The notes beneath the pieces are model-generated. The model did not search any database and was not told the DNA's origin. It saw nothing but the letters and a program-made list of their open reading frames with translations. The position numbers were made by a program, and so were the translations under genes. Of a stretch of DNA of 64,000 nucleotides, positions 32,932 to 49,965 are shown piece after piece (position 1 is the stretch's first letter; each line of letters begins with the position of its first letter). The DNA lies in IMG/VR virus record IMGVR_UViG_3300050821_009835, positions 200,913 through 264,912 of that record; one strand, 5' to 3'.

Positions 32932-33162
32932 ATGGTTGATTTTATCGTTCAAGCATTGGCAGCCGTGTTACTGTTTTTCGGCCTCTGGTCAATGGGGAAC
33001 AACCAGTTGCGTGGACCGTTTGTAACCATGGTTGCTGAAATCTTCACAACTGCTGTTGGGATTATGCATCATACTTGGAGTATCATCCTCATTGGAACTG
33101 TATTGGCTTTTGTGCAAGGGCGGAATTTCCTTAAGTGGCGTAAAGAAGGAATAGCCTGGTAA
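32932..33162 (+). CDS. Small 3-TM membrane protein, PnuC/SemiSWEET-like half transporter candidate
   Basis: Three hydrophobic segments, ending GRNFLKW; AAGGAG RBS. Confidence 0.35.
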   Translation: MVDFIVQALAAVLLFFGLWSMGNNQLRGPFVTMVAEIFTTAVGIMHHTWSIILIGTVLAFVQGRNFLKWRKEGIAW

Positions 33163-33178
33163 GTCTAGGAGAATAAAC

Positions 33179-34543
33179 ATGCTGTTTGGTAAAGGTCAGT
33201 GGGCTATTCTTGGCCTTAAAGTAGATTCCTTCCCGAAATTCCAAGCTACTCTGGCTGATCCATTGAAGACGCTGCTTGTTTCTCAATTGGTGGCAAGCAT
33301 CCGTACACGCTTCAAAAATTGCTCTACAGTTGGCATCAATCCGTTTGATAAACCGCGCATGGATGAGGTTTTGGCGGAATCCCCTAATTCTGTATCTTTG
33401 GTAGACCCCGGCGTAGAGGATATTCAGCACTATCTAGAACTTCGTGAAACCATGGGGCCGGATTACTCTGCTACGTTTGATCCTCTTTGCTACGCTAAGG
33501 CATATGGAGCGGTGGAGCCGGATTTCGTTTTGGACGCCAACCTGTTCAATACTTACGGTTTCTGGGTTGTCTTCAACGATTATGAGGATGTAAGCGATGT
33601 TGCCAGCAAAAAGGAACAACTGGCATACGAAACCCTGGGCCGTCCGTATAAATTTGCTGTTAAGGATGACAAATCTCGCATTGACTTAACTGCAAATGGA
33701 TTCTCCATTCATGCTCGGAAGCAATTTCCAGTCATTGTAGATTATCAGACTGGGCGAGTCTTTATTGCTTCTTCAAACACAGAAGAGATATTGACCGTGC
33801 GTCAAATGTTGGAGAATATGGGCGCGGTTGTGAATAGCGTGTACTGGTCTTTTGGTAAACCAGATTGGACTAGAGATTTCTTGACTAAGATCTCGGAAAC
33901 AACAAAGTTTGAGGCGGAATTTCAAAAACGTACAGAAGAACGTACAAGATTTACAAAAGAACAAGTTGAGAAACTGGAAGACAAAATGATGGAGAGAATT
34001 GTTTCCACCTTCTTCTCCTTAGCAGAACTCCCTACAGGACAATGGGCCGGACTGAAAGCTCCCACCCGTCTTAAGATGATGAAGACTGCTGAACCTGTAT
34101 CCTGTGCTGATCCTACCGCAGCGTTCTACATCCGTTACATGGCTAATGAATTTGAAGTTGTCTCTGCTGGCGTGGTTTTCCAAGAGTTGACTAGTCGACT
34201 CATGAAGGATAAGGAGATTCCAGTTCGGCATGACCTTTTTACTCTGACGATCGATGACAACATCAATAATTTTGATGCCGGGGCTGCGATGTTGAAGGGG
34301 TTTGACCTGCCTAAATATAAGAACGAAATGAAGCAATTCTTAAAGCAGAAGGGGCAAGCTGCAATCAAAGATTACTGGTACAACTGGTGCTCTGGTATGC
34401 GAGGAGCTATTGCATACTTCGTTGACAATGTAGCAGAAACGCTCGATCTTAAGGCTTCGTCCAACATAAAGCCGGATGAGTATGGTTTGCTCGCAGCCAA
34501 ATATGATGCAGCAGAAGTTAGCGACATCGCTGCGAATCTTTAA
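33179..34543 (+). CDS. Hypothetical protein (454 aa), weak RdgC-like segment
   Basis: VIVDYQTGRVFIASSNTEEILTVRQML resembles the RdgC core; AGGAG RBS. Confidence 0.4.
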   Translation: MLFGKGQWAILGLKVDSFPKFQATLADPLKTLLVSQLVASIRTRFKNCSTVGINPFDKPRMDEVLAESPNSVSLVDPGVEDIQHYLELRETMGPDYSATFDPLCYAKAYGAVEPDFVLDANLFNTYGFWVVFNDYEDVSDVASKKEQLAYETLGRPYKFAVKDDKSRIDLTANGFSIHARKQFPVIVDYQTGRVFIASSNTEEILTVRQMLENMGAVVNSVYWSFGKPDWTRDFLTKISETTKFEAEFQKRTEERTRFTKEQVEKLEDKMMERIVSTFFSLAELPTGQWAGLKAPTRLKMMKTAEPVSCADPTAAFYIRYMANEFEVVSAGVVFQELTSRLMKDKEIPVRHDLFTLTIDDNINNFDAGAAMLKGFDLPKYKNEMKQFLKQKGQAAIKDYWYNWCSGMRGAIAYFVDNVAETLDLKASSNIKPDEYGLLAAKYDAAEVSDIAANL

Positions 34544-34551
34544 GGATATGT

Positions 34552-35076
34552 ATGTCAGAAAATAAACTATGGGAAGGCACACGTGGAGAAGGGTGCCATG
34601 GGTTTCCAAGACCGCACGCAGCACCCCCGGATTCCTTTGATCTGGATAAAAAATTTCCTCGAGTCATGATCGCCGCCATTGTTACTCGTGGTTCTGAAAT
34701 CTTATTGGGACGTAGTAAGGAGGCTAAATGGGTTATCCCCGGCGGAGAAGTCAAGCCATTTGAATCACTCCCCAACACGATTACACGAATCTTAAGAGAA
34801 GAAGCAAATGTTGATATTCGCCCCGGTTCGACACTTTTTGTTTCCGAAAATTTCAAACCAGAGATTGATCATCTGATTGCAATATATGTTGAAGCAGATT
34901 ACTTGGGTGGGTACCTCAAGGCGGGCGGCAATTTCAAAGATGTTTGTTGGGTGGATGTTCGTCAACTTGGGGATATGCAGGATGCTATGAGTCAGCTTAC
35001 GATTGATGCACTGCACAAATTTAGCCTCATCTTGAAAGCGCGGGCTATTCAAAAGAAACAGAGTGTATTTCCGTGA
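34552..35076 (+). CDS. Nudix hydrolase
   Basis: WVIPGGEVKPFES...RILREEANV Nudix box. Confidence 0.85.
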   Translation: MSENKLWEGTRGEGCHGFPRPHAAPPDSFDLDKKFPRVMIAAIVTRGSEILLGRSKEAKWVIPGGEVKPFESLPNTITRILREEANVDIRPGSTLFVSENFKPEIDHLIAIYVEADYLGGYLKAGGNFKDVCWVDVRQLGDMQDAMSQLTIDALHKFSLILKARAIQKKQSVFP

Positions 35077-35853
35077 GTGGGCTGTTGGATTTACTGATGG
35101 CCTTTCAGATGTTGCTCAGGGAAGCCTGGCATTTTATTCGGGATGTATTTTTGGTTATCGCTGGGTTAGCGATAATTGCATACTGGTGGCCTCGTAAGGG
35201 AAAATAATGCAAACGACAAAGAAACTGCAATTGACATTAGAAATAGCGGGGAAATCTCGGAAACAGAGAAATTGAGTAGTTTTATTCAGAGCGAATTGGG
35301 ACGTATTTCTAAACTCCCTGGTGTTGTTACTTATGAAATCACAATAGATCATTCGTTGGGTGAACCAATACCGGGTGACCCAACGTTTGGAATGACAGAA
35401 GGTCCTGTTGATAGCTGCCTTCCTAAACTGAGTTGGTGGAAGAGAATCGCTAATATAACCGATTTCTACCACTACGTAGTATTATACAGAAGCAGTACTT
35501 TCCGTGGGAACCACGGTTTAGCCGTCTGTCTTGGGTTGAAGTAAGACCTGATTGGGGGCGGAATCCATGAAATGGAAGTTCACAGATATGAATTACCAAC
35601 GCCAAACACGAATTACCACAACGACCACGCAAGTGGGCGTCTCTGGTTCGTGTGTAACCGTTGGCAAGTAAGACCAAGGTTAGATCGATCCGAAGACGCT
35701 CTCCAGTGATGGAGGGCATTTTTGTTTTATGGAGGAATCTATGGAAACAAATTGGCATGAATGGACGAGTTGTGAATTTTACGGTCATGTTTTCCAGACC
35801 GATGAAGAAACTGGCCGCACTCATTGCACAGACTGCGGTGAAAAAACCGAAGA

Positions 35854-35930
35854 CCACGAGTAGCTCAGTTGGTAGCAGCAATTGGCCGATAACCGATAGG
35901 TCGCAGGTTCGATCCCTGCCTCGTGGACCA
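35854..35930 (+). tRNA. trnI: tRNA-Ile(GAU), CCA encoded, C at position 33
   Basis: Acceptor CCACGAG/CTCGTGG; anticodon arm ATTGG-CCGATAA-CCGAT; T-loop TTCGATC; ACCA end. Confidence 0.9.
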
Positions 35931-36017
35931 AAATTTTAATGGAGGCCAAATATGGCTGAAGAAAAGGAACAGCACGAGGAGTATCCGATGAACGGGCCTT
36001 GTTGCTAGAGGAATTTT

Positions 36018-36099
36018 GCTAGGATGGCTCAGCGGCGACAGCAGCAGTTTCGTACACTGCCATACAAACACAGGGGTTCGAGTCCCCTTCCTAGCTCCA
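36018..36099 (+). tRNA. trnT: tRNA-Thr(CGU), 11-nt variable region, CCA encoded
   Basis: Acceptor GCTAGGA/TCCTAGC; arm GCAGT-TTCGTAC-ACTGC; variable CATACAAACAC; T-arm AGGGG-TTCGAGT-CCCCT. Confidence 0.85.
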
Positions 36100-36104
36100 A
36101 GTTT

Positions 36105-36177
36105 GCAGATGTAACACAATTGGCAGTGTACTTCCTTGGTAAGGAAGAGGTTGTGGGTTCGACTCCCATCGTCTGCT
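36105..36177 (+). tRNA. trnT: tRNA-Thr(GGU), no encoded CCA
   Basis: Acceptor GCAGATG/CGTCTGC; arm CTTCC-TTGGTAA-GGAAG; T-loop TTCGACT. Confidence 0.9.
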
Positions 36178-36215
36178 CTTTCGTGACTTTCTTTAAGAAA
36201 GGTTCATGACGAATT

Positions 36216-36395
36216 ATGAATAACGGGTGCCCATGTAGCAGCTGTCATCCATACGGTGCAGCTTATTGTTGGTGTTTTCTCCACAGACTAGAGCACCCGT
36301 TAGTAGAGAAGATTATCAATGCGGAGAGCTGGCGTGAAACCAGCCAATTGATGAATGAACTTTACACGACGTATTTGAGTCGTTTAGGAAGATAA
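36216..36395 (+). CDS. 59-aa Cys-rich protein inside the tRNA cluster
   Basis: MNNGCPCSSCHPYGAAYCWCFLH...; AAGAAAGG upstream. Confidence 0.5.
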   Translation: MNNGCPCSSCHPYGAAYCWCFLHRLEHPLVEKIINAESWRETSQLMNELYTTYLSRLGR

Positions 36396-36399
36396 GTTT

Positions 36400-36485
36400 G
36401 CTGGTATCGCATAGTGGCCGATTGCAGCAGTTTTGTAAACTGCCGGAGAAATCCCACGGGGGTCCAAATCCCTCTGCCAGCTCCA
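36400..36485 (+). tRNA. trnT: tRNA-Thr(UGU), long variable arm, atypical T-loop, CCA encoded
   Basis: Acceptor GCTGGTA/TGCCAGC; arm GCAGT-TTTGTAA-ACTGC; variable CGGAGAAATCCCAC; T-loop TCCAAAT. Confidence 0.85.
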
Positions 36486-36492
36486 AAATTTT

Positions 36493-36579
36493 AGGGCGGT
36501 CGGGTAATGGCATCCCACCTGACTTTGAATCAGACGAGCCTTCGGCTCATTGTAGGTTCGAATCCTACCCGCCCTGCCA
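36493..36579 (+). tRNA. trnQ: tRNA-Gln(UUG), long variable arm, CCA encoded
   Basis: Acceptor AGGGCGG/CCGCCCT, G73; loop CTTTGAA; variable CGAGCCTTCGGCTCATT; T-arm GTAGG-TTCGAAT-CCTAC. Confidence 0.85.
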
Positions 36580-36737
36580 ACTCCAATAACTACGGCAAGA
36601 TAGGGCGACCAGATTTGTAGCTGTTAGTGTTAGTGCATAATACCCGAAATTCCCACCTCATCCGTAGCTTAACTCCAAGGACGTGTGTTCTGTAGTATCT
36701 GAATAACAGTCCTAATTCGAAGTTCAGGAGAGAAGAC

Positions 36738-37550
36738 ATGAAGTTATTTCGTTCAGTAGTACTCGCAACAATTCTGTTGGCGGCTGCATTTGTTTTGGCT
36801 CAAAAACAGACTGGAAATCAAACTCAGAACGGCAAGCAGAACTGCACAGGTATTGGCCAGTGTCAGGGTCAACAACAGAATCAAGGGCAGCAGCAGGGTC
36901 AGAATCAGACAGGCACTAACACTCAGTCTGGAGTGAACACGGGTACCAATACTCAATCAGGCACCAATACTCAATCAGGCACTAACACTCAGTCCGGTAA
37001 GATCACCAGCAACAATTCCAACACTTCTGCTGGCGGTGCAGCTACTGCTCAGAACAGTCAGACGAGTAACAGCGTCTACAATGATTCTCGTCAGACGCCG
37101 CCTACTTTCGTTACTCCTCCCTTCCCCACCGATCATTGTCAAGCAACGGGTGGCGGTGGCGGGGCAGGAGGCGCATTCAGCTTTGGCATCTCCGGCAGTC
37201 ACACCAACAAGGAATGTCAGCAAGTTTCAACCGCACAAGCCTTTGCTGCTCTTGGAAATCCTACTGCGGCGGCTAAGATTCTGTGTGCCACCAAAACTGC
37301 TAAGCAGGCCAACCTCACCTTTGAGGATTGCCTAAAGATTGCTCAGCCACAAGAACAGGTGGCACCAACCCCAGCGCCTGTAGCTGAGCCTGTAGCCCCA
37401 GCACCGATCGTCGTACCTGCTCCGCAGGTTACGATTAACATCCCTCCGCAAGTAGTGACTGCGCTTATTCCACCGTTGACAGAAACTCCTACGGTGGTAA
37501 TAAAACACAAAAAGAAATCCAGGCCTTGTGTTCAATCTTCTGAAAAATAA
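36738..37550 (+). CDS. Secreted Q/N/T/G-rich protein with Cys-containing core and Pro-rich tail
   Basis: Signal peptide MKLFRSVVLATILLAAAFVLA; AGGAG RBS. Confidence 0.7.
   Translation: MKLFRSVVLATILLAAAFVLAQKQTGNQTQNGKQNCTGIGQCQGQQQNQGQQQGQNQTGTNTQSGVNTGTNTQSGTNTQSGTNTQSGKITSNNSNTSAGGAATAQNSQTSNSVYNDSRQTPPTFVTPPFPTDHCQATGGGGGAGGAFSFGISGSHTNKECQQVSTAQAFAALGNPTAAAKILCATKTAKQANLTFEDCLKIAQPQEQVAPTPAPVAEPVAPAPIVVPAPQVTINIPPQVVTALIPPLTETPTVVIKHKKKSRPCVQSSEK
36912..36998 (+). repeat. Degenerate 18-bp coding tandem repeat (TNTQSG)
   Basis: ACYAAYACTCARTCNGGN units, four full copies plus a partial. Confidence 0.75.
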
Positions 37551-37602
37551 TTGGGAGTAAAGCGAAGAGGTAAACGGGTCTCCAGTTAATTGGAGACCCG
37601 TT

Positions 37603-40502: not shown

Positions 40503-41474
40503 TTGAATAAGCCATCTTGGGGCGTAATCGTTGGCCGTTTTCAAGTGCACGAACTCCATGAAGGTCACATGGACTTATTCCGCGCCGTCATGGGACGCCA
40601 TAATCGTGTAATTGTTTTTGTGGGTAAGTCTCCGAATGGAATGACCAAACGTAACCCGCTAGATTTCGTTACTCGCAAGGCGATGATTCAAGCAAAGTTC
40701 CCTAATTTTACAGTTCTTCCTTTGATTGATTGTATGACAGACGAGGCGTGGTCTGATTCTCTGGACGCCAAAATCCGAGAGGTTGTTGACTATGGCGACG
40801 TTACTCTGTATGGGGGCCGTGACAGTTTCGTGCCTCATTACCACGGTGCCTATCCTCCTGTTGAACTCGCTTTGCCTACCACGGAGCACATCAAAGGCGA
40901 AGACATTCGGGCAAAGTTGACAAATACGATCATCGAGTCCGCTGATTTTCGCGCTGGCGCTATTTACTCCGCGATGAATCAGTGGCCCAAAGCCATTACT
41001 TGCGTGGATGTAGTCATGTATCACTACTCTTGGTCAGATGTGAATAAAAACAATGACGACATGGAGTTCCTTCTCTGCAAGAAATACGGTGAGCCTGGTT
41101 GGCGTTTCGTGGGTGGCCACACTAAACCGATAACTGAGACTTTTGAACAGGATGCCAAAGATGAAGCTAGGGAAGAAGTGGGCCAATATCTAACCAAAAT
41201 GGAGTATATTGGCAGCTGTTATGTTCCCGACTGGCGCTGGGCGGCTGAGCAGGATAAAGTCAAGACGCTCGTGTTCGCCTCCGAGACTATGACTCTATCC
41301 GCTGCAGCAAAGGACGACATTTCTGAAGCGAAATGGTTTTCTATTCGTGAACTGAAAGAGGGGCTCCTCAACCCGGTTCATCACCCGATATTAAAGCTCG
41401 TACAAGAAGGATTCAGAAAGGAATTCAAACTATATGCCGCGCCCATTTCAACCGCGTCCGTTGCACAAGACTGA
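40503..41474 (+). CDS. nadM: Bifunctional NMN adenylyltransferase / Nudix (ADP-ribose pyrophosphatase)
   Basis: VGRFQ...HEGH, RNPL, D..W, YGGRDSF; C-terminal GGH....ET...A..EAREEVG, DDI..AKWF. Confidence 0.9.
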   Translation: MNKPSWGVIVGRFQVHELHEGHMDLFRAVMGRHNRVIVFVGKSPNGMTKRNPLDFVTRKAMIQAKFPNFTVLPLIDCMTDEAWSDSLDAKIREVVDYGDVTLYGGRDSFVPHYHGAYPPVELALPTTEHIKGEDIRAKLTNTIIESADFRAGAIYSAMNQWPKAITCVDVVMYHYSWSDVNKNNDDMEFLLCKKYGEPGWRFVGGHTKPITETFEQDAKDEAREEVGQYLTKMEYIGSCYVPDWRWAAEQDKVKTLVFASETMTLSAAAKDDISEAKWFSIRELKEGLLNPVHHPILKLVQEGFRKEFKLYAAPISTASVAQD

Positions 41475-42864
41475 CAGCTATAAGGTTGGTCACTGGAGAT
41501 TCATTGTCCCGGGAACTACGGAGATGCTCTACTACTACGAAGCTCGTGGCGGCGAGTATCCATACACTGTACTATTTGATCTCCAAGGAAACATTCAACG
41601 CAACATCGAAGGTCGTTTCGCCACTCTAACTGATGTTGAGGAGGCAGAATTTAAGGCGGGTCTCCATTTTGGCACGGATCGTGCTTTCAATAAAGAGGGC
41701 TGGCGCCACGTCATCAACAAGCATGGCGGTCACCTACCTTTGGATATCCGCGCTGTGAAAGAAGGCATTCCTGTAGAAGTGAAGAACGTTATGTGGACAA
41801 TGAAGAACTCATGCCCTGATTGTGCTTGGGTTCCTGGTTGGACAGAAACAATTCTGGAGCATACCTGGTACGGCTCCGGCGTTGTCACCAAATCTCGGTA
41901 TTCCAAAGAAATGATTGCTGAATTTCTTTCGGGTACAGCAGATGATTTTTCTACTTTGCCTTTTCAGCTGCATGACTTCGGTGGTCGCGGCGTCACTTGT
42001 GATCTACAAATGGGCATCGGGGCAGCGGCTCATTTAGTCAATTTCCAAGGCACTGATACATTGCCTGGTCTAGACTACATTGAGCAGTTTTATGGGTTTG
42101 GAATCGAAAACGAAATGCCCGGCTTTTCTGTATTCGCTACAGAGCATTCTGTCACTACAATGTGGAAACGGGAGTATGAATCCCAGTTTGTAGAGAACGC
42201 TTTGAATGAGGTTCCGTCGGGAATTCTTTCTTTGGTTGGAGATAGCTATGATATCTTCAACTTCACGGCTAATATCATCGGCGGGACTTACCGCGAACGC
42301 ATTCGCAATCGAGATGGTAAGGTTGTTGTTCGCCCCGACTCAGGTGATTCAGTTGCAGTAACACTTCGAGTACTTGACATTTTGGCAGAGAAATTTGGCA
42401 TTCGTGAGAATGACAAAGGTTACAAGGTTCTCCCGCCCTGTGTAGGTGTGCTGTGGGGAGATGGCATTGATCACTATGGCATTCGAAAAATTTTGCAGGC
42501 CATGAAGGACGCCAAGTGGTCCGCATCTAACATTGTCTTCGGTATGGGCGGAGGGTTGCTTCAGAAGATTAACCGCGATACGCAGAAGGTTGCTATTAAA
42601 TGCTGTAATGCGGTAGTCAACGGCGGCCAAGTTGAGATTTGGAAAGACCCCGTTACTGACCCAGGTAAGGCTTCTAAGCGAGGACGCTTGGCACTTCTGG
42701 AAGATTCGAATGACCAATATCGCACGGTGCAATACAAGGATGAAAGGGCGGGTTGCCCATTTGATCTCCTTGAGCCAGTTTTTCTTAATGGTGAATTATT
42801 AAGATTTCAGAAGTTCCCGGAGATTCGTAAGCTGGCGGAGGTTGTTCTTCCTGTTTACGTATAG
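41434..42864 (+). CDS. nadV: Nicotinamide phosphoribosyltransferase
   Basis: TDSYKVGH, LHDFGGRG, HLVNFQGTD, ATEHS, SLVGDSYD, VRPDSGD, GDG, FGMGGGLLQKINRDT, SKRGRL. Confidence 0.95.
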   Translation: MPRPFQPRPLHKTDSYKVGHWRFIVPGTTEMLYYYEARGGEYPYTVLFDLQGNIQRNIEGRFATLTDVEEAEFKAGLHFGTDRAFNKEGWRHVINKHGGHLPLDIRAVKEGIPVEVKNVMWTMKNSCPDCAWVPGWTETILEHTWYGSGVVTKSRYSKEMIAEFLSGTADDFSTLPFQLHDFGGRGVTCDLQMGIGAAAHLVNFQGTDTLPGLDYIEQFYGFGIENEMPGFSVFATEHSVTTMWKREYESQFVENALNEVPSGILSLVGDSYDIFNFTANIIGGTYRERIRNRDGKVVVRPDSGDSVAVTLRVLDILAEKFGIRENDKGYKVLPPCVGVLWGDGIDHYGIRKILQAMKDAKWSASNIVFGMGGGLLQKINRDTQKVAIKCCNAVVNGGQVEIWKDPVTDPGKASKRGRLALLEDSNDQYRTVQYKDERAGCPFDLLEPVFLNGELLRFQKFPEIRKLAEVVLPVYV

Positions 42865-43125: not shown

Positions 43126-43569
43126 ATGCCCCCAATTTCTAACCCCAACGCTCGCCAAATCGGTGGTACCCATTACAATCAGGTCTCAATTCAACATTGG
43201 GACCTTGTTCTAACCAATCGCCTTCCTTATCTTGAAGCACAAGCCACCAAATATGTGACTCGTTGGAAAAAGAAGAATCAGGCTGTCGCCGATATCGATA
43301 AGTCGCAGCACTATCTAGAGAAGCTGATTGTTTCTATTCAAGAAGGCTTCTTGCCGATGCCCACTCCAGAGTTTACATCATGCGGGTCTCCTAGAGTGCC
43401 ATTGACAAACCTGGATGAATTCGCTTCTCAAAACAAGATCGGCGATGTTGAAAAGACAATCTTCTACCTTCTCTTGACTTACACTACAATGGATGAACTT
43501 GAAAGGATACGCATACTTCTTGCTCATCTCATGATAGAGGCAAAAGAATTTGAAGCATCTCTGGTATGA
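43126..43569 (+). CDS. DUF3310-like protein
   Basis: QIGGTHY....QHWD...YLE..ATKYVTRWKKKN...DIDK..HYL. Confidence 0.75.
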   Translation: MPPISNPNARQIGGTHYNQVSIQHWDLVLTNRLPYLEAQATKYVTRWKKKNQAVADIDKSQHYLEKLIVSIQEGFLPMPTPEFTSCGSPRVPLTNLDEFASQNKIGDVEKTIFYLLLTYTTMDELERIRILLAHLMIEAKEFEASLV

Positions 43570-44012: not shown

Positions 44013-44288
44013 ATGCCCTACACTGAACCTCAAGATCGTGTTAAGGTTGATGAATTGATTGCGGGTGCCGTTTCTCACACTGGTGATTGGTCCGCTGGGG
44101 ATCTTACCTACGGGTTGACAAAACTAGTCGTGGCTTGGATCAAAAGCCATGGTAAGAAGTACCTGAATCTAGCCATCGTTATGGGCTGCCTCTTTTGTAC
44201 GGCCTTTGAACTTTATCGCCGAGTGATTGCGCCATACGAGGATAAAAAGCGCCAAGATAATGGCGATGTTTATGGTGACATTCTCTAA
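44013..44288 (+). CDS. Conserved small phage protein (MPY...GDLTY...YRR...PYED.K...NGDVY family)
   Basis: Recognisable family pattern, function unknown. Confidence 0.65.
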   Translation: MPYTEPQDRVKVDELIAGAVSHTGDWSAGDLTYGLTKLVVAWIKSHGKKYLNLAIVMGCLFCTAFELYRRVIAPYEDKKRQDNGDVYGDIL

Positions 44289-44888
44289 ATGAGTGTCATC
44301 TATGGTTTTCGCGGCGCAAATGGTTCTGGTAAATCGACTCTTGTCCGTCAACTCATGAAGCATATTGGCGTTGTAGCTGATCTTACAGAGCCCTCCGGTA
44401 AGGTCTGGGGGTACGAACTCCAGAACAACATCCGTGTCTTGGGTCGATATGAAACTCAATGCGGCGGTGTGGATGCCATAAAAGAAGTTCGTGTACCCGG
44501 TCAGTCCGGATTTGTAAACACTCGAAAGGGAATTACACTCCTTGCCTCTCTAGGGCATGTCATTTTTGAAGGAGTGCTATGGTCAACCGTTTTCAAGAGT
44601 AGCGACCTCATCGCTCGGGCGCTCCCTCAACATCATTTTATCTTTGCCATGCTAGATACCCCGGCTGAAGTTTGCATTGAACGAGTGCGGGCAAGACGGT
44701 TGGAAAAAGGCAATCATAAACCCTTCAACCCACGAGAGCTATTGTCGAAGGTGGAACAGATCCGAAGACGACAAGAAGATTTGAAGAAAGCTGGGTATGA
44801 TACTCGGACGATACCGTATCAGTCGGCTTTATCTACGGTATGCGGTTGGCTTGCTGAGGAAGGTGTGTTAATCCAACCGCCAGTTTGA
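44289..44888 (+). CDS. P-loop nucleotide kinase
   Basis: RGANGSGKST, LGRY...CGGVD, IFEG, LDTP.EVC.ERV..RR lid. Confidence 0.75.
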   Translation: MSVIYGFRGANGSGKSTLVRQLMKHIGVVADLTEPSGKVWGYELQNNIRVLGRYETQCGGVDAIKEVRVPGQSGFVNTRKGITLLASLGHVIFEGVLWSTVFKSSDLIARALPQHHFIFAMLDTPAEVCIERVRARRLEKGNHKPFNPRELLSKVEQIRRRQEDLKKAGYDTRTIPYQSALSTVCGWLAEEGVLIQPPV

Positions 44889-45460
44889 GACGGAAGTAGG
44901 TTTGTGCTTTCCCAAGATTTTACAACCTTCAGCGCCCAATTGATAAGCTGCTCATGCCCTTCGTCGTTTCCTTTGATTTCCAAGTTGAAAGGCTTACCAA
45001 TTATTTCTCGAATCTTTGGTTCTAAGGCAGCTGCCTGCTCTTCTGTTTCTCGACGTTCTCCAGCGCGATAGGCATGTGCGCGCTGGATAAAGACGTTGTA
45101 AGTACCATGGCCATTCAAATGGTAATAGGTTGCGCAATTTTCTAGAAGTGCTTGTAATTCTTTATGGTAGGGAAGATGCTCAGAGTACAGAGAACCCTGC
45201 TGAAAAGGGCATTCTGCGATTGCAATATCAACCCTAAATCGTTCAAGCCGTTTCACACGCTCGAATTGCAAAGCACTAATAAGAAACTGATTGTCATCCA
45301 GTTGACAGGTGGATTGACTGTACATGTGCTCTCGAGCTTGTTCCCCAACTAATTCAACATGGTAGTGAGCTTTTTTAAAAGCAAGGAAAAGGGCTGCGGC
45401 GGCAGTTGTTTTCCCACCTCCCGGTGGAGACCACAAGTTAAAAAGTAGCATGAAACCCAA
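44819..45460 (-). CDS. NadR-C/AAA_28-like P-loop kinase or ATPase
   Basis: NLWSPPGGGKTT, ELVGEQARE, ECP, R..ETEEQA. Confidence 0.65.
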   Translation of the reverse strand: MGFMLLFNLWSPPGGGKTTAAAALFLAFKKAHYHVELVGEQAREHMYSQSTCQLDDNQFLISALQFERVKRLERFRVDIAIAECPFQQGSLYSEHLPYHKELQALLENCATYYHLNGHGTYNVFIQRAHAYRAGERRETEEQAAALEPKIREIIGKPFNLEIKGNDEGHEQLINWALKVVKSWESTNLLPSQTGGWINTPSSASQPHTVDKAD

Positions 45461-45491
45461 TACCGGAATCTTCTACAGGAGCAATTTTTAA

Positions 45492-46418
45492 ATGGTAACT
45501 CTTACTAATGGGAAGACCCTCCAAGCGGGGGATCTTGATATCTGCGTTCGAGGTGCAGACGGATCCATGATCGATCCCGCAGCGATTACTTACAGCATCT
45601 TCCAAATTGATAAGCAGATTCCCGTTCGCCCCACTCTAGCATACTCTTACGACCAGATGCAGCCGGACAAACTATCATCGCATTCGGTAAACCCTGAATC
45701 CACATTGGTTTACGGGCCAATGCAAGTTCCCACTCGCTCTTCGCAGGGATGTTACTATGTTCCTATCACTGTCCCAACAACATGGCATGGTGTCTTTCGT
45801 CTTGTCTGGTATCTGACGCAGTATGCAGGTGGTCAGCAGAACATGGTTCATGAAGAATTCGCGGTTGAAAATGTTGACCCAACTTCCATGAGTTTTGAGG
45901 CTCCCTCCGTCCAGATGGCAAAGGCTCCGCGCACTACTCACAAATACACGAAAGCGATTATGTATGTGCGGGAACTACTTTCAGATGATAACCCGGATCG
46001 AAACTATCACTTTCGTCCCCCAACTCCGAGTAAGGTGGTTGCGGGTTATACGACTCGTGTGGGGTATATCTGGACGGATCAGACGATTATTCGTATGTTG
46101 GAGATGTCGATACAGGACTTGAATACGTGGAATCCAATGAACTTAACAGCCTACACGTTGGATACTCTTCCTTTAAATTGGAGTTCAGCAGCGGCAACAG
46201 GTGCAGCGGCGAAGTGTTTGAATCGGGAAGGCGCTCGTTGGGCGGCGGATGAATTCAGTTTTTCGTTGAACGGTGTCAGTTTGGATATCAATAAGGCTGC
46301 ACTCTATCAGGGAATGGGTGCTCAGTACCGGGCAGAATTTTCAGAAATGGCCCCGTTAGTCACAGCTAACCGCCCTGGATCCGTGGGTTTACGTCAGCAA
46401 CGCTGGCTTTTGGGATGA
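45492..46418 (+). CDS. Putative neck / head-tail adaptor protein
   Basis: Ig-like N-terminus, then YVRELLSD.NPDRNY.F..P...GYIW.D; FSFSLNGVSLDI; structural gene context. Confidence 0.6.
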   Translation: MVTLTNGKTLQAGDLDICVRGADGSMIDPAAITYSIFQIDKQIPVRPTLAYSYDQMQPDKLSSHSVNPESTLVYGPMQVPTRSSQGCYYVPITVPTTWHGVFRLVWYLTQYAGGQQNMVHEEFAVENVDPTSMSFEAPSVQMAKAPRTTHKYTKAIMYVRELLSDDNPDRNYHFRPPTPSKVVAGYTTRVGYIWTDQTIIRMLEMSIQDLNTWNPMNLTAYTLDTLPLNWSSAAATGAAAKCLNREGARWAADEFSFSLNGVSLDINKAALYQGMGAQYRAEFSEMAPLVTANRPGSVGLRQQRWLLG

Positions 46419-46513
46419 TGGATTACCTGTTCCCGCTTATTTGGCCTCTGTGCAATTTGTATCATGTCCTTAGATAACTCATCAATAATCCAACTATCAG
46501 TATTATTGGTAGA

Positions 46514-48541
46514 ATGGACAAAATTCAACGGAAACAGCTTTTCTTAGAATATGCTTCCGATTCAAAAACCTGGTACGCAAAAGTACCTACTCTAGAGCCC
46601 TGTGAACTAGGTTGTGGAAGACGAGCCGCCTTTCTCCTTAAAAACTCTTGGCTCTTCTGTTGCCAAAATTCAGCCAAGCGATGCCTCAATCCTCTGCTCA
46701 CATCCAACCTTATCTGTTATGGATGTGGGCAGTCAGCTTCTTTGTTGCAAACCTGCGGACCTGTCTGTGGGAAACTCCCAACAGGAATCCGTTGCCCCGT
46801 CGCTGCAGAAGAAAACAAACTACGCAGGAAATCCTCCGCAAAACAGCATTTTCAGGATCCTGTATTTGCCACCCAACGTCAGAAAAGGTTTGTTGCTACC
46901 ATGATGAGTCGCCACGGCGCTCCGTCTGCTATGGCTTCTCCGGAACTCCGTAAGAAGATTTCTGCAACGATCCAAGAAAAGTACGGTGCGGATTGGGCAC
47001 CTAGCATCCCTGGTGTTTTCGATGCGGCTCGTCAACGTTGCCAAGACGAACATGGAGTGGATCATTGGACTAAACTAGACTCTACGAAACAAGCTCGAGC
47101 TGCAACTTGCCTAAAACAATATGGATTCTCCAATCCTGTAAAGTCCCCCATCGTGTTGAACAAACGCAGACAGAATTGGCGCAATAAATATGGGGCAGAT
47201 CACCCTCAGCAGATTAAGGCAATCACTGATCGTCGATACAAAACGTGGTTGAAAAATCAAGGCGGTTTAGTCTTTGGAAGTCCAACTTGGTGGAACAAAT
47301 ACCAGCCTTCCTACCAACAACGTACAGGATTTGCTCATCCCACTCAAGATCCTGAACGCATTAGAAAATGGATGAAGACCTTCTATCCCAGTTGTTTCCG
47401 TACTAAAGAAATGGTTCTTCCTTCAGGGAACACCATCCAGTTCCAAGGGTATGAGGACAAAGCCATCAACCATTTGCTAAAGAGTTATCGTGAGAATGGC
47501 CTGCTCTGGGGAGATGAGATCCCGCAAATTACCTATGTTAAACCTGACGGGGAGCCGGGATTGTATTTCCCTGATCTTTGTCTCGAACACGAGAAGATTC
47601 TCATAGAAGTTAAATCCACTTATACCTTGATGGAGGAGATACAACGAGGATTGCTCAGGGCCAAGTTCCAGGGAGCGTTAAAAGCAGGCTGGAATCCTCG
47701 AGTAGAAGTCTGGTCCGAGAGGGAAGATTTTCCCGTGGAGATTGACGCTAACCTGATTTGTCAGGATGACGGATTTGAGTCGTTCTCTTCCTTCATTTTA
47801 GAGTTGTGGCCAGAAGCCAAAATTTCTTTCTACGAAATAGAAGTCCCGGACATCGGCGCTATTGACTACCGCGTCCTGTACCAATTCATGAGTGGGGTGA
47901 AAAAGAAATTCAAAACTCCCCATTTTGTCGTGTTTGAAGATGAGTGGAAAACAAGACCCAATATCGTAAAAAACTTCTTGTTTTCCCTTGTTAAGTCGAA
48001 ACGACAGGGAAGTCGTATCGTACCTCAATTCCTTACTCATGGTCGCCTACTCCCTGAGCACAAAATATTCCTGCAAGAGCAGCACTACCTAGGAGCAGTA
48101 AAAACGGGAGGATTGGTGATTTCCGCCATCTGGGAAGGGAAGATTGTGGGCCTTTGGGTGTTCAAGAAGCGAAATTCTGAAACTGCGGAGTGGACTCGAG
48201 CTTGCTGGGACCACAACTTTAAGGCTTGGCAACCTCATGGTGAAGCTCTCCAGATAGCCAAGGAGAAGTTAGCGCAGCAAGGAATAAAGGAGATGGTGAG
48301 TTTCTCTGACAACCGATATCATTCAGGAAAACTCTACGAGGCTTTGGGATTTTCTAAAACAGGTGAATTACCTCCGGATTACATGTACACCGACGGGCAC
48401 GAACGCCAGCACAAATTCCGTTTTCGGGTTCCCGCAGGCGTCCCTGAGGAAGAATTCGCCGCCCGCAAAGGCTGGTACAGAATTCAAGACCTAGGGAAAT
48501 TGAGATTCGGTCTAGAAACGTCGTCACCTCCAAGCAAGTAA
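46514..48541 (+). CDS. Multidomain Hef-like homing endonuclease (repeats + PD-(D/E)XK + GNAT-like)
   Basis: CxCG/CxGC motifs; (K/R)YG..(H/N)P repeats; YFPDL...ILIEVKS; FLQEQHYLG...VSFSDNRY..GKLYEALGF...PDYMY. Confidence 0.7.
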   Translation: MDKIQRKQLFLEYASDSKTWYAKVPTLEPCELGCGRRAAFLLKNSWLFCCQNSAKRCLNPLLTSNLICYGCGQSASLLQTCGPVCGKLPTGIRCPVAAEENKLRRKSSAKQHFQDPVFATQRQKRFVATMMSRHGAPSAMASPELRKKISATIQEKYGADWAPSIPGVFDAARQRCQDEHGVDHWTKLDSTKQARAATCLKQYGFSNPVKSPIVLNKRRQNWRNKYGADHPQQIKAITDRRYKTWLKNQGGLVFGSPTWWNKYQPSYQQRTGFAHPTQDPERIRKWMKTFYPSCFRTKEMVLPSGNTIQFQGYEDKAINHLLKSYRENGLLWGDEIPQITYVKPDGEPGLYFPDLCLEHEKILIEVKSTYTLMEEIQRGLLRAKFQGALKAGWNPRVEVWSEREDFPVEIDANLICQDDGFESFSSFILELWPEAKISFYEIEVPDIGAIDYRVLYQFMSGVKKKFKTPHFVVFEDEWKTRPNIVKNFLFSLVKSKRQGSRIVPQFLTHGRLLPEHKIFLQEQHYLGAVKTGGLVISAIWEGKIVGLWVFKKRNSETAEWTRACWDHNFKAWQPHGEALQIAKEKLAQQGIKEMVSFSDNRYHSGKLYEALGFSKTGELPPDYMYTDGHERQHKFRFRVPAGVPEEEFAARKGWYRIQDLGKLRFGLETSSPPSK

Positions 48542-48606
48542 GGCGATTAAGACCATACCTATCAATGCGATACTCTCGAGTATGAGTCTTTCTGTCTTGT
48601 AAGTCA

Positions 48607-49965
48607 TTAGTTGAATTCGACCAGATAGCGGATATTCGCTTGCGACGTACGATAGACAATTTGCTCGTCGTTGATTACGCCAGAGCGACCCGGCTTGGCC
48701 CAGCAAGAATCATAACCGAGGCGTTTGCCGTTGCCGCTACCGCTCGGGATGTACTCCTTGCCCATCGCCACGTCAACCATGAACATGTAGCAGTTCTTGT
48801 CACGCGACCCGCCGTCCCAGTAGCCGTATGCATAATTTAAACTTTTTGTGCTCATCGCGGAGAAGTAGAGACCAGTCCCATACATCGCCCCTGTGGTTTG
48901 AACCGTGCTCAATTCGGTGGGCAAAACAAATCCACGTTTCAAAATCGAAAGCACATTGAACATGCGAGTGCCATGCCACAAAGATTTGATGTTACCAACC
49001 TTCTTACCGTCAGCATTAAAGGCCGCTTCCATGTGCGGGATGCGAACTTCGTATACACGAACCGGGCGAAGATGTGAGCACTCGTGACGTCCTTTGCTGT
49101 CGTAGTACATCCGCTCGATTTTGGAGATCACGTTGCGATCGTCGACCAGTTTCAATTCGCAGTTGAAAGTCTGAGCCAGTGGTTTCGCATTCACCTTGTT
49201 GACGTTGTTGATCGCGTCAGTCTGGCGCTGGTTGGCGATTTCGATAGAAGATTCTAACTGGTCTAGCAACTGAGTCTGCTTGTCCAATTGAATAAAATTC
49301 GTGTGCCATCCGCGCTTAAAGCCAACTTTCTGAGGAACATTACGAAGATAGTTGCCTAACAATTGCTGATAGGAGAGGTCTTCAGTTCGGCCCGATCTTA
49401 CATATGGGGCCATTTGATCCAGGTACTTACGAGCAGCTTTTACAGCTTCGATGGTCACAACGCCAAGAGCCGTGCGAACGATACCTGTTTCGAGGTCAAT
49501 GTCCAACTCGCCGCCTGATGCCACCAACAATTCATGACGGTTGGCTTTGGCCAATTTCTTCACTAAGGCAGATGTAATGGGGCATTTTCCACCGATTTCA
49601 GCAACCGCAACACGCTTCACTTCTTCTTTCGCCATCTGCTTGGGGGCGACGGAGCCTTGTGATCCACCAACGGTGGTGATTAACGTGTAGCTCGGGCCAT
49701 CCTTTTTGTTGGTTTTTTCACGAATCTTTGAAGCCAGGGTTTTCTCATTGAACATTTCTACTTTTGATTCGGGTTTATCCGCTCCCACACGGCCCCAAGT
49801 AAAGCGGATATCACCTGTCAGCATCTTGCCCTTGCTCATTTCGGATACAGGAGTGCTCAAGCGTTCGTACTTCCACCACTTGTTGTTATTATTTGCTGGA
49901 TCGACAGCGACATACATCTTTGTCTCGATGACTTTTACCTCGGGGGCTGTGGCCGTAGCTGTCAT
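48607..49965 (-). CDS. Poly(ADP-ribose) polymerase: WGR + regulatory helical + catalytic domains
   Basis: TWGRVG; LG.V...AV.AA...L...YLRNVP; LWHGT, GAMYGTGLYFS, KSLNY, DVAMG, YDS, NDEQIVY (H-Y-E triad). Confidence 0.92.
   Translation of the reverse strand: MTATATAPEVKVIETKMYVAVDPANNNNKWWKYERLSTPVSEMSKGKMLTGDIRFTWGRVGADKPESKVEMFNEKTLASKIREKTNKKDGPSYTLITTVGGSQGSVAPKQMAKEEVKRVAVAEIGGKCPITSALVKKLAKANRHELLVASGGELDIDLETGIVRTALGVVTIEAVKAARKYLDQMAPYVRSGRTEDLSYQQLLGNYLRNVPQKVGFKRGWHTNFIQLDKQTQLLDQLESSIEIANQRQTDAINNVNKVNAKPLAQTFNCELKLVDDRNVISKIERMYYDSKGRHECSHLRPVRVYEVRIPHMEAAFNADGKKVGNIKSLWHGTRMFNVLSILKRGFVLPTELSTVQTTGAMYGTGLYFSAMSTKSLNYAYGYWDGGSRDKNCYMFMVDVAMGKEYIPSGSGNGKRLGYDSCWAKPGRSGVINDEQIVYRTSQANIRYLVEFN

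What the first reader, a model, noticed from the sequence alone, without database searches (positions are those of the whole stretch)
32932..49965. Candidate self-contained phage NAD+ cycle feeding a PARP
Seen within 17 kb: NAMPT (41434), NMNAT-Nudix (40503), a second Nudix (34552), a NadR-C-like kinase (44819), a PnuC-like half transporter (32932) and PARP (48607). Known chemistry closes a loop: PARP releases nicotinamide, NAMPT makes NMN, NMNAT remakes NAD+, Nudix clears ADP-ribose, and PnuC plus an NR kinase would import precursor. Phage NAMPT/NMNAT pairs are known (KVP40 NadV/NatV; NARP2 anti-defence), but coupling to a phage-owned NAD+ consumer is my inference. No PARG or macrodomain eraser is visible in this window.
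Basis: partly seen in the sequence, partly recalled or inferred. Interest (0 to 1): 0.75.

Follow-up and report, generated by a model that had tools for sequence, protein, structure and literature searches.

The report
Phage NAD+ salvage operon plus stray PARP
A 340-kb soil phage carries a known type of NAD+-rebuilding gene pair and, a few kilobases away, a separately acquired PARP-like enzyme; the two sit near each other but the evidence does not show that one was built to feed the other.

Summary
All six ORFs exist at the stated coordinates. Four calls hold: NadV-type NAMPT, NadM-type NMNAT-Nudix (overlapping ORFs, one operon), a second Nudix, and a WGR-helical-ART PARP with an intact H-Y-E triad. 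The "NadR-C-like kinase" is only a stand-alone AAA_28 P-loop protein. It shows no specific likeness to a NadR kinase domain. The "PnuC-like half transporter" is a conserved 76-aa, three-helix membrane protein with only remote, indirect links to PnuC.

NAMPT plus NMNAT is the published NARP2 pathway, and NAD+ "synthesis plus utilisation" in jumbo phages, PARP included, has already been proposed. A dedicated coupling is not supported:
- PARP lies on the opposite strand, in a ~3.6-kb lineage-specific insertion between backbone genes that are adjacent in three relatives.
- Clade relatives keep NadM-NAMPT without PARP.
- One relative has PARP elsewhere and no NadM-NAMPT at the syntenic slot.
- 7 of 18 complete PARP phages lack any NAPRTase-family gene.

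No Macro, PARG or ARH gene turned up in the genome regions searched. NADAR, DUF4326, an NAD+-dependent ligase and Ku are present. Verdict: a new member of known kinds, of modest interest.

The parts
40503..41474 (+). NadM-type bifunctional NMN adenylyltransferase / Nudix hydrolase (323 aa). First gene of the salvage operon; overlaps the next ORF by 41 nt.
   Evidence: Pfam CTP_transf_like E 0.0018 (aa 9-64) plus NUDIX E 2e-10 (aa 183-298). Weak NadM-Nudix NCBIfam hits. Best PDB relatives 2qjt and 2qjo (NadM-Nudix). 50% identical orthologues next to NAMPT in G089 and G071.
41434..42864 (+). NadV-type nicotinamide phosphoribosyltransferase (NAMPT, 476 aa).
   Evidence: NAMPT_N E 1e-20 plus NAPRTase E 3e-43. 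NF006629 494 bits, above the 405 cut-off. 39-44% identical to the nadV genes of KVP40-like and Xanthomonas jumbo phages.
48607..49965 (-). PARP-like ADP-ribosyltransferase (452 aa) with WGR, helical regulatory and ART domains. Transcribed against the surrounding genes.
   Evidence: Pfam PARP E 2e-20 and WGR E 0.0013. PDB PARP1/2/3, E about 1e-13 to 1e-14. H331, Y367 and E434 invariant. Model pLDDT 79.5. Foldseek matches PARP1/2 WGR-HD-CAT chains on DNA breaks, TMq 0.60-0.67.
49702..49932 (-). WGR domain of the PARP (aa 12-88).
   Evidence: Pfam WGR aa 20-88. Beta-rich N-terminal domain in the model.
49201..49623 (-). Helical (regulatory-type) domain of the PARP (aa 115-255).
   Evidence: Helices 115-255 in the model. 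phmmer alignments to the PARP1/2/3 regulatory plus catalytic fragments start at aa 150-166.
48613..49158 (-). ART catalytic domain of the PARP (aa 270-451) with the H-Y-E triad.
46514..48541 (+). DUF7487 protein (675 aa), inserted together with PARP; function unknown.
   Evidence: Pfam DUF7487 E 1e-39. Absent, like PARP, between the w45492 and w50024 homologues in G002, G089 and G071.
34552..35076 (+). Stand-alone Nudix hydrolase (174 aa); substrate not determinable from sequence.
   Evidence: Pfam NUDIX E 9e-11. Only weak, sub-threshold NCBIfam hits (NudG-like 1e-5, NAD+ diphosphatase 0.005). Nudix box GEVKPFESLPNTITRILREEANV read.
44819..45460 (-). Stand-alone AAA_28-family P-loop protein (about 210 aa from the Met at codon 4). 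NR-kinase role unproven.
   Evidence: Pfam AAA_28 E 1.7e-4, below cut-off. Atlas neighbours are AAA_28 (score 0.96, TM 0.74). Homologues carry PF13521. No match to NadR. Absent in G002, G089 and G071.
32932..33162 (+). 76-aa three-helix membrane protein, remotely PnuC-like (candidate 'half-PnuC').
   Evidence: Negative results.

Best explanation
The window is the last 64 kb of a 264.9-kb contig of a ~340-kb soil jumbo phage. The flagged span holds two independent NAD+-related modules embedded in replication and repair genes.

Module 1 is a NARP2-type salvage operon. NadM-type NMNAT-Nudix (40503-41474) is followed by NadV-type NAMPT (41434-42864) on the same strand, with ORFs overlapping. NAMPT condenses nicotinamide with PRPP to NMN, and NadM adenylates NMN to NAD+. 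Its Nudix domain hydrolyses ADP-ribose or NAD+. This operon is an old feature of the phage clade. By analogy with KVP40 NadV/NatV, it rebuilds NAD+ during infection, both against NAD+-depleting host defences and for all NAD+-using phage enzymes. The gene calls are shown here; the activities are inferred from family membership.

Module 2 is a PARP2/3-like enzyme (WGR, helical domain, ART, H-Y-E intact) on the opposite strand. It arrived with a DUF7487 gene as a ~3.6-kb lineage-specific insertion. Its architecture predicts a nucleic-acid-end-activated ADP-ribosyltransferase that modifies itself or nearby proteins, releasing nicotinamide. This is inferred, and whether it makes poly or mono adducts is unknown.

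Nicotinamide released by PARP can be recycled by Module 1, so a metabolic link exists by mass action. It is incidental rather than a dedicated, co-inherited cycle.

The extra Nudix, the AAA_28 protein and the 76-aa membrane protein are separate accessory genes. Their roles in NAD+ metabolism are unproven.
For: Gene identities.

Operon structure of NadM-NAMPT: a 41-nt overlap on the same strand. The same order and overlap are conserved in G089 and G071 at 50% and 44% identity, and the genes are adjacent in G003.

PARP as an insertion:
- The w45492 and w50024 homologues abut in G089.
- In G071 and G002 they are separated only by a w21781-like gene.
- PARP and DUF7487 are absent from that slot in all three relatives.
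- PARP's neighbours differ in all five closest PARP loci and in cultured phages.

Distribution:
- A NAPRTase-family gene without PARP in 3 of 4 complete PolA relatives, and in 11 of 28 backbone-marker fragments (0 of 28 with PARP above cut-off).
- PARP without a NAPRTase-family gene in 7 of 18 complete IMG/VR genomes and in Cellulophaga phages.
- PARP-positive jumbo genomes have a NAPRTase-family gene in 11 of 14. This is indistinguishable from 3 of 4 in PARP-negative relatives (Fisher p = 1).
- In GenBank phages the NAPRTase family occurs in 2016 records and PARP in 16.

Another phage NAD+ consumer: an NAD+-dependent ligase domain at C1:78591-79316, E 1.8e-43.

Literature:
- NARP2 is defined as Nampt + Nmnat and counters Thoeris and DSR2 (bioRxiv 10.1101/2024.02.11.579819).
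- NadV occurs in 33% of jumbo phages, and every NadM phage has NadV (PMC9503650).
Against: PARP-bearing jumbo genomes carry a NAPRTase-family gene more often (11 of 14) than the published 33% for jumbo phages (binomial p = 6e-4).

In 6 of 19 complete genomes holding both genes, PARP lies within 30 kb of the NAPRTase-family gene, against 3.7 expected (p = 0.15). Several short PARP fragments also hold such a gene 12-25 kb away. Loose regional linkage therefore cannot be excluded.

No enzymatic activity was measured. The host is unknown, and no expression timing is available. An RNA library holds pieces of NadM, NAMPT and the AAA_28 gene, but DNA carry-over is not excluded, and none was listed for PARP.
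Confidence: 0.65

Rival explanations
1. One reading: a dedicated, self-contained phage NAD+ cycle. PARP consumes NAD+ and releases nicotinamide, NAMPT and NadM remake NAD+, Nudix enzymes clear ADP-ribose, and a half-PnuC plus an NR kinase import precursor. The genes were selected to work together.
For: - All the chemistry is established for the families involved.
- The genes lie within 17 kb.
- PARP-bearing jumbo genomes have a NAPRTase-family gene in 11 of 14, against a literature base rate of 33% (PMC9503650).
- PARP lies 13-29 kb from that gene in G003, G007, G010, G020, LR756500 and LR756511.
- Li et al. 2024 propose synthesis plus utilisation, with PARP as one consumer (PMC11662467).
Against: - PARP and DUF7487 are a lineage-specific insertion, and NadM-NAMPT predates it in the clade.
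- Both single-gene states occur among relatives.
- PARP is on the opposite strand with no shared transcription unit.
- No Macro, PARG or ARH was found to release free ADP-ribose.
- The NR kinase and PnuC assignments are weak.
- No PRPP synthetase is encoded, so the cycle is not self-contained for PRPP.
Confidence: 0.12
2. PARP works mainly as part of phage DNA-end or DNA-break handling, sensing nicks or ends through its WGR domain alongside the phage's own Ku, NAD+-dependent ligase and 5'-3' exonuclease. It has no special relation to NAD+ salvage. This concerns PARP's role and is compatible with the best explanation.
For: - The whole-chain fold matches PARP1/2 WGR-HD-CAT bound to DNA double-strand breaks.
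- The phage encodes Ku (300 aa) and a 5'-3' exonuclease in the 340-kb assembly.
- It encodes an NAD+-dependent ligase adenylation domain, UvrD, and an RdgC-like protein.
- In Cellulophaga phages PARP sits one gene away from a DNA ligase.
Against: - None of these genes is adjacent to PARP here.
- Co-occurrence of PARP with Ku was not tested.
- DNA binding and activation were not tested.
- Phage ARTs are generally thought to act on host targets early in infection (PMC9503650).
Confidence: 0.35
3. The 76-aa membrane protein and the AAA_28 protein form a split, NARP3-like nicotinamide-riboside route. Import occurs through a dimeric half-PnuC, NR is phosphorylated to NMN, and the NMN feeds NadM, supplementing NARP2.
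For: - Atlas neighbours of the 76-aa protein are 76-87-aa viral clusters in which 50% or 18% of members carry PF04973.
- hhalign gives 87% (E 3.7e-6) to a 72-aa phage ORF that hits PF04973 at 7.8e-11.
- Other half-size PF04973 ORFs exist in jumbo phages G013 and G020.
- AAA_28 is the Pfam family of the NadR kinase domain.
- NARP3 (PnuC plus a NadR-like enzyme) is an experimentally shown phage pathway (PMC13464706).
Against: - The 76-aa protein itself has no significant PF04973 match.
- Only 2 of 19 homologues hit weakly.
- There is no match to a full-length phage PnuC or to the PDB.
- The dimer prediction gave no verdict.
- The AAA_28 profile does not match NadR or a phage NadR-like protein.
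- The two genes are 12 kb apart on opposite strands, with unrelated genes between them (RdgC-like, PP2C, UvrD).
- The AAA_28 gene is missing from relatives.
Confidence: 0.1

Closest known systems
NARP2 / KVP40 NadV-NatV NAD+ salvage pathway (Lee et al. 2017; Osterman et al. 2024, bioRxiv 10.1101/2024.02.11.579819)
   Same: A NadV-type NAMPT next to a bifunctional NMNAT-Nudix, on the same strand, in a large phage. NAMPT is about 40% identical to KVP40 nadV.
   Different: - The NMNAT half is very divergent: under Pfam and NCBIfam cut-offs, and only E 3e-4 to Francisella NadM.
- Activity and anti-defence effect are untested.
- The host is unknown (soil metagenome).
Phage and bacterial PARP homologues (PART family; Xanthomonas phages XacN1 and Xoo-sp13, Stenotrophomonas RAS14, Klebsiella FBKp34, Cellulophaga phi17:2; eukaryotic PARP1-3)
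   Same: - WGR, helical domain and ART architecture with the H-Y-E triad.
- 31-35% identical over 97% of its length to PARPs of cultured phages.
- 41-65% identical to five IMG/VR phage PARPs.
   Different: - Most PARP phages examined also carry a Macro domain (19 of 26), and 3 of 26 carry a bacterial-type PARG. This phage has neither.
- It has no zinc fingers or BRCT domain, unlike PARP1.
- Product length (mono or poly) and targets are unknown.
'NAD-jumbo phages' with independent synthesis and utilisation of NAD+ (Li et al. 2024, PMC11662467) and the viral NAD+-ADPr network survey (Iyer et al. 2022, PMC9503650)
   Same: Co-presence in one jumbo phage of salvage genes (NAMPT, NadM), NAD+ consumers (LigA-type ligase, PARP) and ADPr-processing domains (Nudix, NADAR, DUF4326).
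   Different: Those papers describe genome-level co-presence. Here the history of the locus was resolved and shows that PARP was added later to a clade that already had the salvage operon.
NARP3 (PnuC-like transporter + NadR-like NMNAT/RNK; PMC13464706)
   Same: Possible NR import and phosphorylation functions: a PnuC-like membrane protein and an AAA_28 P-loop protein.
   Different: - No full-length PnuC.
- No bifunctional NadR.
- The genes are not adjacent and lie on opposite strands.
- Homology is weak or absent in direct tests.

Membership tests
NARP2 (phage NAMPT + NMNAT NAD+ reconstitution pathway) | NadV/Nampt-type nicotinamide phosphoribosyltransferase | tested here: met
   PF18127 plus PF04095. 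NF006629 494 bits against a 405 cut-off.
NARP2 (phage NAMPT + NMNAT NAD+ reconstitution pathway) | NMN adenylyltransferase (NadM/NatV type, fused to Nudix) encoded in the same phage | tested here: met
   The architecture is met: an HxGH-type nucleotidyltransferase N-domain plus NUDIX. The best PDB hits are NadM-Nudix proteins. Sequence scores lie below the curated cut-offs, so the call rests on architecture and context.
NARP2 (phage NAMPT + NMNAT NAD+ reconstitution pathway) | The two genes are linked (operon) | tested here: met
   Same strand with a 41-nt overlap. The arrangement is conserved in G089, G071 and G003.
NARP2 (phage NAMPT + NMNAT NAD+ reconstitution pathway) | Restores NAD+ and overcomes NAD+-depleting defence systems | not testable with these tools
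   Needs expression against Thoeris, DSR or SIR2-HerA, with NAD+ measurement.
PARP (PARP1-3-like poly/mono ADP-ribosyltransferases) | ART fold with the H-Y-E catalytic triad | tested here: met
   PF00644 E 2e-20. H331, Y367 and E434 invariant. Foldseek probability 1.00 to PARP catalytic domains.
PARP (PARP1-3-like poly/mono ADP-ribosyltransferases) | Helical regulatory domain preceding the ART domain | tested here: met
   Helices at aa 115-255 in the model. Alignments to the PARP1/2/3 regulatory plus catalytic fragments start at aa 150-166. PF02877 itself was not reported at E <= 0.01.
PARP (PARP1-3-like poly/mono ADP-ribosyltransferases) | WGR nucleic-acid-binding domain | tested here: met
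   PF05406 E 0.0013, 19.2 bits, under the 22-bit cut-off. The whole chain superposes on WGR-HD-CAT chains of PARP1/2, TMq 0.60-0.67 over about 500 columns. The conserved N..NKxW and GRVG motifs are present.
PARP (PARP1-3-like poly/mono ADP-ribosyltransferases) | DNA/RNA-end-stimulated ADP-ribosylation, with polymer formation | not testable with these tools
   Needs a biochemical assay.
Complete PAR cycle (PARP + PARG/Macro/ARH eraser) | A PAR- or MAR-hydrolysing eraser encoded with the PARP | tested here: not met
   PF01661, PF05028, PF10021 and PF03747 are absent at E <= 1 from the 264.9-kb contig. None appears among the precomputed Pfam hits of genes called over roughly 253-340 kb of the full assembly; one end gene was not looked up. 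Only NADAR and DUF4326 are present.
NARP3 (PnuC-like transporter + NadR-like enzyme) | PnuC-type (PF04973) NR transporter | tested here: inconclusive
   PF04973 has no match in the contig or on the 76-aa protein. Remote links exist only through Atlas neighbours, 2 of 19 homologues and hhalign to a half-size PF04973 ORF.
NARP3 (PnuC-like transporter + NadR-like enzyme) | Bifunctional NadR-like NMNAT + ribosylnicotinamide kinase | tested here: not met
   The AAA_28 protein is stand-alone. It shows no similarity to the NadR-like protein of phage FBKp34 by BLASTP or hhalign beyond the P-loop, and no NadR hit in the PDB.
NARP3 (PnuC-like transporter + NadR-like enzyme) | Two-gene cassette (adjacent genes) | tested here: not met
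   32932-33162(+) and 44819-45460(-) are 11.7 kb apart on opposite strands.

The most novel reading that the evidence does not exclude
This phage runs an eraser-less PARP whose NAD+ drain is tolerated because the clade's pre-existing NARP2 operon buffers it. It also supplements that operon with a previously undescribed split NR route: a homodimeric three-helix 'half-PnuC' (a SemiSWEET-like counterpart of PnuC) plus a stand-alone AAA_28 NR kinase. That would make PARP acquisition contingent on prior possession of salvage. It would also define a new minimal vitamin-B3 transporter family in phages.
Probability: 0.1. Interest if true: 0.6.

Novelty: new member of a known kind. Interest (0 to 1): 0.3.

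Why it matters
NAD+ is a central battleground between phages and bacterial defences. It matters whether phage NAD+ salvage exists only to counter host NADases or also to pay for the phage's own NAD+-burning enzymes.

Here the locus history says the salvage operon came first and PARP was bolted on later. This favours a general-supply role for salvage. It leaves the function of phage PARPs, which are rare (16 of 50,697 GenBank phage records), as the open question.

The case also flags two things:
- A phage PARP for which no eraser was found, unusual among PARP phages.
- A small family of 72-77-aa PnuC-like membrane proteins that may deserve a transport assay.

Tried and rejected
- **Megablast against GenBank phages:** the 10-kb region gave no match, so there is no close cultured relative.
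- **PADLOC:** no defence-system identity for any of the ten proteins beyond weak P-loop or Nudix hits.
- **Profile of the 76-aa family against the PDB:** no PnuC or SemiSWEET hit. hhalign to the full-length PnuC of FBKp34 and to the 74-aa ORF of G013 gave no support.
- **Homodimer prediction of the 76-aa protein:** no verdict; not used as evidence.
- **AAA_28 protein and profile against the PDB and a phage NadR-like protein:** only generic P-loop matches such as APS kinase and SRP54.
- **The 454-aa ORF between the 76-aa gene and the Nudix:** checked as a possible NAD+ enzyme, but its Atlas neighbours are RdgC-like, so it was dropped.
- **First structure job with GenBank-derived rows:** Repeated with permitted IMG/VR rows only.
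- **The genome search on the 340-kb metagenome record:** not possible. I walked it instead with the look-up of encoding contigs.
- **Promoter and terminator scan of 40-51.5 kb:** no more sites than shuffles, so uninformative.
- **Sub-threshold PARP Pfam matches (14-17 bits) in seven clade fragments:** two representative fragments (G071 and G089) were checked by tblastn with the window's PARP and not confirmed there.
- **RNA evidence:** a soil metatranscriptome holds 213-513-nt contigs identical to NadM, NAMPT and neighbouring genes. None was listed for PARP. DNA carry-over cannot be excluded, so no expression claim is made.
- **PRPP synthetase, SIR2 and KptA in the contig:** none convincing.

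Full report
**What the sequence is.** The window is G000:C1:200913-264912, the last 64 kb of a 264,912-bp IMG/VR viral contig that CheckV rates 78% complete. The same phage was assembled elsewhere as a 340,335-bp contig and as a 264,969-bp contig plus a 75,412-bp contig, in other assemblies. The public runs that hold this DNA are labelled soil metagenome. G000 corresponds to roughly the first 264.9 kb of the 340-kb assembly. No GenBank phage is similar at the DNA level. The window also encodes a family-A DNA polymerase, a ClpX-like ATPase and two RNA ligases. This is an uncultured jumbo phage.

**Checking the observation.** Four calls are solid.
- NAMPT (41434-42864+) has NAMPT_N and NAPRTase domains and passes the NCBIfam equivalog cut-off, 494 against 405 bits.
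- The upstream ORF (40503-41474+) overlaps it by 41 nt. It has an HxGH-type nucleotidyltransferase N-domain and a Nudix C-domain. Its best solved relatives are the NadM-Nudix enzymes of Francisella and Synechocystis, although scores are low.
- 34552-35076(+) is a Nudix hydrolase of undeterminable specificity.
- 48607-49965(-) is a PARP. The Pfam catalytic domain scores E 2e-20, with a weak WGR match, and PARP1/2/3 are the best PDB relatives. H331, Y367 and E434 are invariant in 12 and in 24 homologues. An AlphaFold model (pLDDT 79.5) superposes over its whole length on the WGR-helical-catalytic chains of human PARP1 and PARP2 bound to DNA breaks, TMq 0.60-0.67.

Two calls are weaker.
- The "NadR-C-like kinase" (44819-45460-) is a real, conserved gene of the AAA_28 family. 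Neither the protein nor a profile of its homologues matches NadR in the PDB or the NadR-like NMNAT/RNK protein of Klebsiella phage FBKp34 beyond the P-loop.
- The "PnuC-like half transporter" (32932-33162+) is a conserved 76-aa protein with three predicted helices and 19 homologues of 76-77 aa.
  - Against the call: it has no significant PF04973 match of its own, PF04973 is absent from the contig, and its profile finds no PnuC in the PDB or in FBKp34.
  - For the call: its nearest ESM-Atlas clusters are 76-87-aa viral proteins of which 50% or 18% carry PF04973. Two of 19 homologues hit PF04973 weakly. The profile aligns at 87% probability (E 3.7e-6) to a 72-aa ORF of another jumbo phage that itself hits the N-terminal half of PF04973 at 7.8e-11.
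  - A remote half-PnuC is therefore plausible but unproven. A dimer prediction gave no verdict.

**The span is not a compact cluster.** Between the 76-aa gene and the Nudix lies an RdgC-like protein. Between the Nudix and NadM lie PP2C and UvrD. Between NAMPT and PARP lie DUF3310, DUF6899, a 5-hmdU-DNA-kinase-like protein, the AAA_28 gene on the other strand, an unknown 308-aa protein and a DUF7487 protein. Only NadM and NAMPT form an operon.

**Erasers and other NAD+ genes in the genome.** The 264.9-kb contig has no match at E <= 1 to Macro, eukaryotic-type PARG, bacterial-type PARG or ARH. I walked the rest of the 340-kb assembly. The precomputed Pfam hits of its genes include none of these either, with one end gene not looked up. 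The following are present:
- NADAR at C1:137170-137550, E 1.5e-21.
- DUF4326, which Iyer et al. predict to process ADPr phosphates (PMC9503650).
- An NAD+-dependent DNA-ligase adenylation domain at C1:78591-79316, E 1.8e-43.
- Ku, a 5'-3' exonuclease and rIIB.

There is no PRPP synthetase and no SIR2. PARP is therefore not the only phage NAD+ consumer. The step from protein-bound ADP-ribose to free ADP-ribose is not obviously covered by the phage, and PRPP must come from the host.

**Co-occurrence across phages.** In GenBank phages a NAPRTase-family gene occurs in 2016 of 50,697 records and PARP in 16. Of ten PARP records examined, eight have a NAPRTase-family gene; the two Cellulophaga phages do not. 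In all six cultured phages that have both genes, they are 60-190 kb apart.

An alignment-based scan of IMG/VR found 61 PARP loci. Among the 18 contigs at least 90% complete, 11 have a NAPRTase-family gene: 11 of 14 above 200 kb and 0 of 4 below. That exceeds the published 33% for jumbo phages (p = 6e-4). It equals the 3 of 4 seen in complete, PARP-less relatives of this very phage found through its DNA polymerase (Fisher p = 1). Proximity within 30 kb is seen in 6 of 19 complete genomes against 3.7 expected (p = 0.15).

**Locus history in relatives (the most telling result).** Three relatives share the window's backbone.
- In G089 and G071 the NadM-Nudix and NAMPT genes are present in the same order (50% and 44% identity). 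The homologues of window genes 45492-46418 and 50024-51382 lie next to each other. tblastn finds no PARP.
- In G002, UvrD is followed within about 1.6 kb by the DUF3310 gene, with no NadM-NAMPT between them. The backbone continues as in the window but without DUF7487, PARP or the AAA_28 gene. G002's PARP sits about 7 kb upstream of UvrD on the same strand.
- Of 28 further clade fragments carrying a backbone marker that lies 2 kb from PARP in the window, 11 hold a NAPRTase-family gene and none holds a PARP above cut-off.

Window 46514-49965 (DUF7487 + PARP) is therefore a lineage-specific insertion of about 3.6 kb into a clade that already had the salvage operon. Both "salvage without PARP" and "PARP without salvage at the locus" occur among relatives. 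PARP's neighbours also differ in all five closest PARP loci.

**How it most likely works.** NadM-NAMPT is a NARP2-type pathway: nicotinamide + PRPP gives NMN, and NMN + ATP gives NAD+. KVP40 experiments show this raises NAD+ during infection and defeats NAD+-depleting defences (bioRxiv 10.1101/2024.02.11.579819). The pathway serves whatever uses NAD+ in the infected cell, including the phage ligase and PARP. PARP's architecture predicts activation by nucleic-acid ends and auto- or trans-ADP-ribosylation. Its targets, and whether it makes polymer, are unknown. A role near DNA ends (with Ku, ligase and exonuclease) and a host-takeover role are both open. The metabolic link between PARP and salvage is real by mass action but not a dedicated, co-inherited system.

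**Comparison with what is known.**
- NARP2 membership is met on three of four defining features; the fourth, activity, is untestable here.
- PARP membership is met on fold, triad and domain architecture.
- NARP3 membership is not met.
- A full PARP/eraser cycle is not met. This is unusual, since 19 of 26 PARP phages examined have a Macro domain and 3 have a bacterial-type PARG.
- The broader idea that jumbo phages both make and use NAD+, with PARP listed as a consumer, is already in print (PMC11662467). The viral NAD+-ADPr network, including PART-family ARTs, NadV/NadM, NADAR and DUF4326, has been surveyed (PMC9503650).

**Expression.** A soil metatranscriptome library holds short contigs identical to NadM, NAMPT, DUF3310, DUF6899/kinase and the AAA_28 gene. 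No RNA run was listed for the PARP gene. DNA carry-over is not excluded, so I draw no conclusion.

**Verdict.** The salvage pair and the PARP are real, and their co-presence is of a kind already described. The evidence from relatives argues against a purpose-built cycle. This is a new member of known kinds, of modest interest. The eraser-less PARP and the candidate half-PnuC family are the two points worth a bench test.

Noticed in passing
window 44289-44888 (+); also 43126-43569, 44013-44288; 340-kb assembly about 333.5 kb (L114:18069-18944): A 5-hmdU DNA kinase-like P-loop protein (PF18748, E 5e-7) sits with DUF3310 and DUF6899 genes, and an HMUDK_hel protein lies elsewhere in the genome. 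This suggests thymidine hypermodification of the phage DNA.
   Followed up: no
G000:C1:78591-79316 (+), outside the window: NAD+-dependent DNA ligase adenylation domain (E 1.8e-43) in a 402-aa ORF. It is a second phage-owned NAD+ consumer.
   Followed up: partly
G000:C1:137170-137550 (-) = L001: NADAR domain protein (E 1.5e-21), the only classical ADPr-processing domain found besides Nudix. A DUF4326 protein (98 aa) lies at about 330 kb of the 340-kb assembly (L114:14729-15025).
   Followed up: partly
340-kb assembly about 308.7-309.6 kb (L112:8919-9821), L112:1946-2926, L112:7474-8784: The part of the genome missing from the IMG/VR contig encodes Ku (300 aa), a 5'-3' exonuclease and an rIIB-like protein. 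Ku together with a WGR-PARP is a suggestive pairing for DNA-end handling.
   Followed up: no
L104:1522-1740 (-) in G020; L105:1501-1725 (+) in G013: Other jumbo phages carry 72-74-aa ORFs that match only the N- or C-terminal half of the PnuC family PF04973 (E 7.8e-11 and 2.6e-5). Half-size PnuC-like proteins may be a recurrent phage feature. In G013 the ORF is flanked by a small P-loop kinase and a 188-aa ORF that I did not identify.
   Followed up: partly
G000:C1:113111-113314 (-), inside a 1823-aa ORF: Weak, sub-threshold KptA/ART-like match (PF01885, E 0.007) within a very large ORF. It may be an ART-like domain in a large, perhaps virion-associated, protein.
   Followed up: no
window 6873-7940 (+) and 31525-32688 (+): Two RNA-ligase-family genes (PF09414), the first fused to an HNH nuclease domain. 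No KptA or 2H partner was found, so an RNA-repair set, if any, is incomplete.
   Followed up: no
window 33179-34543 (+): A 454-aa protein with no Pfam, PHROG or NCBIfam hit. Its ESM-Atlas neighbours are RdgC-like recombination-associated proteins (score 0.92; poor model, pLDDT 0.44).
   Followed up: partly
window 21781-22530 (+) and copies in L013, L115, L171: A 249-aa protein has extra, partly 85%-identical copies at different positions in related phages, including inside the slot where PARP sits here. It behaves like a mobile gene such as a homing endonuclease. A GIY-YIG gene (61174-61938 -) and several HNH genes are also present.
   Followed up: no
PARP-bearing phage genomes: Macro domains occur in 19 of 26 PARP-bearing complete or GenBank phage genomes and in 0 of 4 PARP-less relatives of this phage (Fisher p = 0.012, small n, not corrected for ancestry). 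Bacterial-type PARG occurs in 3 of 26. This phage is an exception, with PARP but no Macro or PARG.
   Followed up: partly
L103 (Klebsiella phage FBKp34, MW394390.1 113.5-117.1 kb): A PARP-bearing cultured phage carries an adjacent NadR-like (348 aa) plus full-length PnuC (232 aa) pair, a NARP3-type cassette, as well as a NAPRTase-family gene.
   Followed up: no
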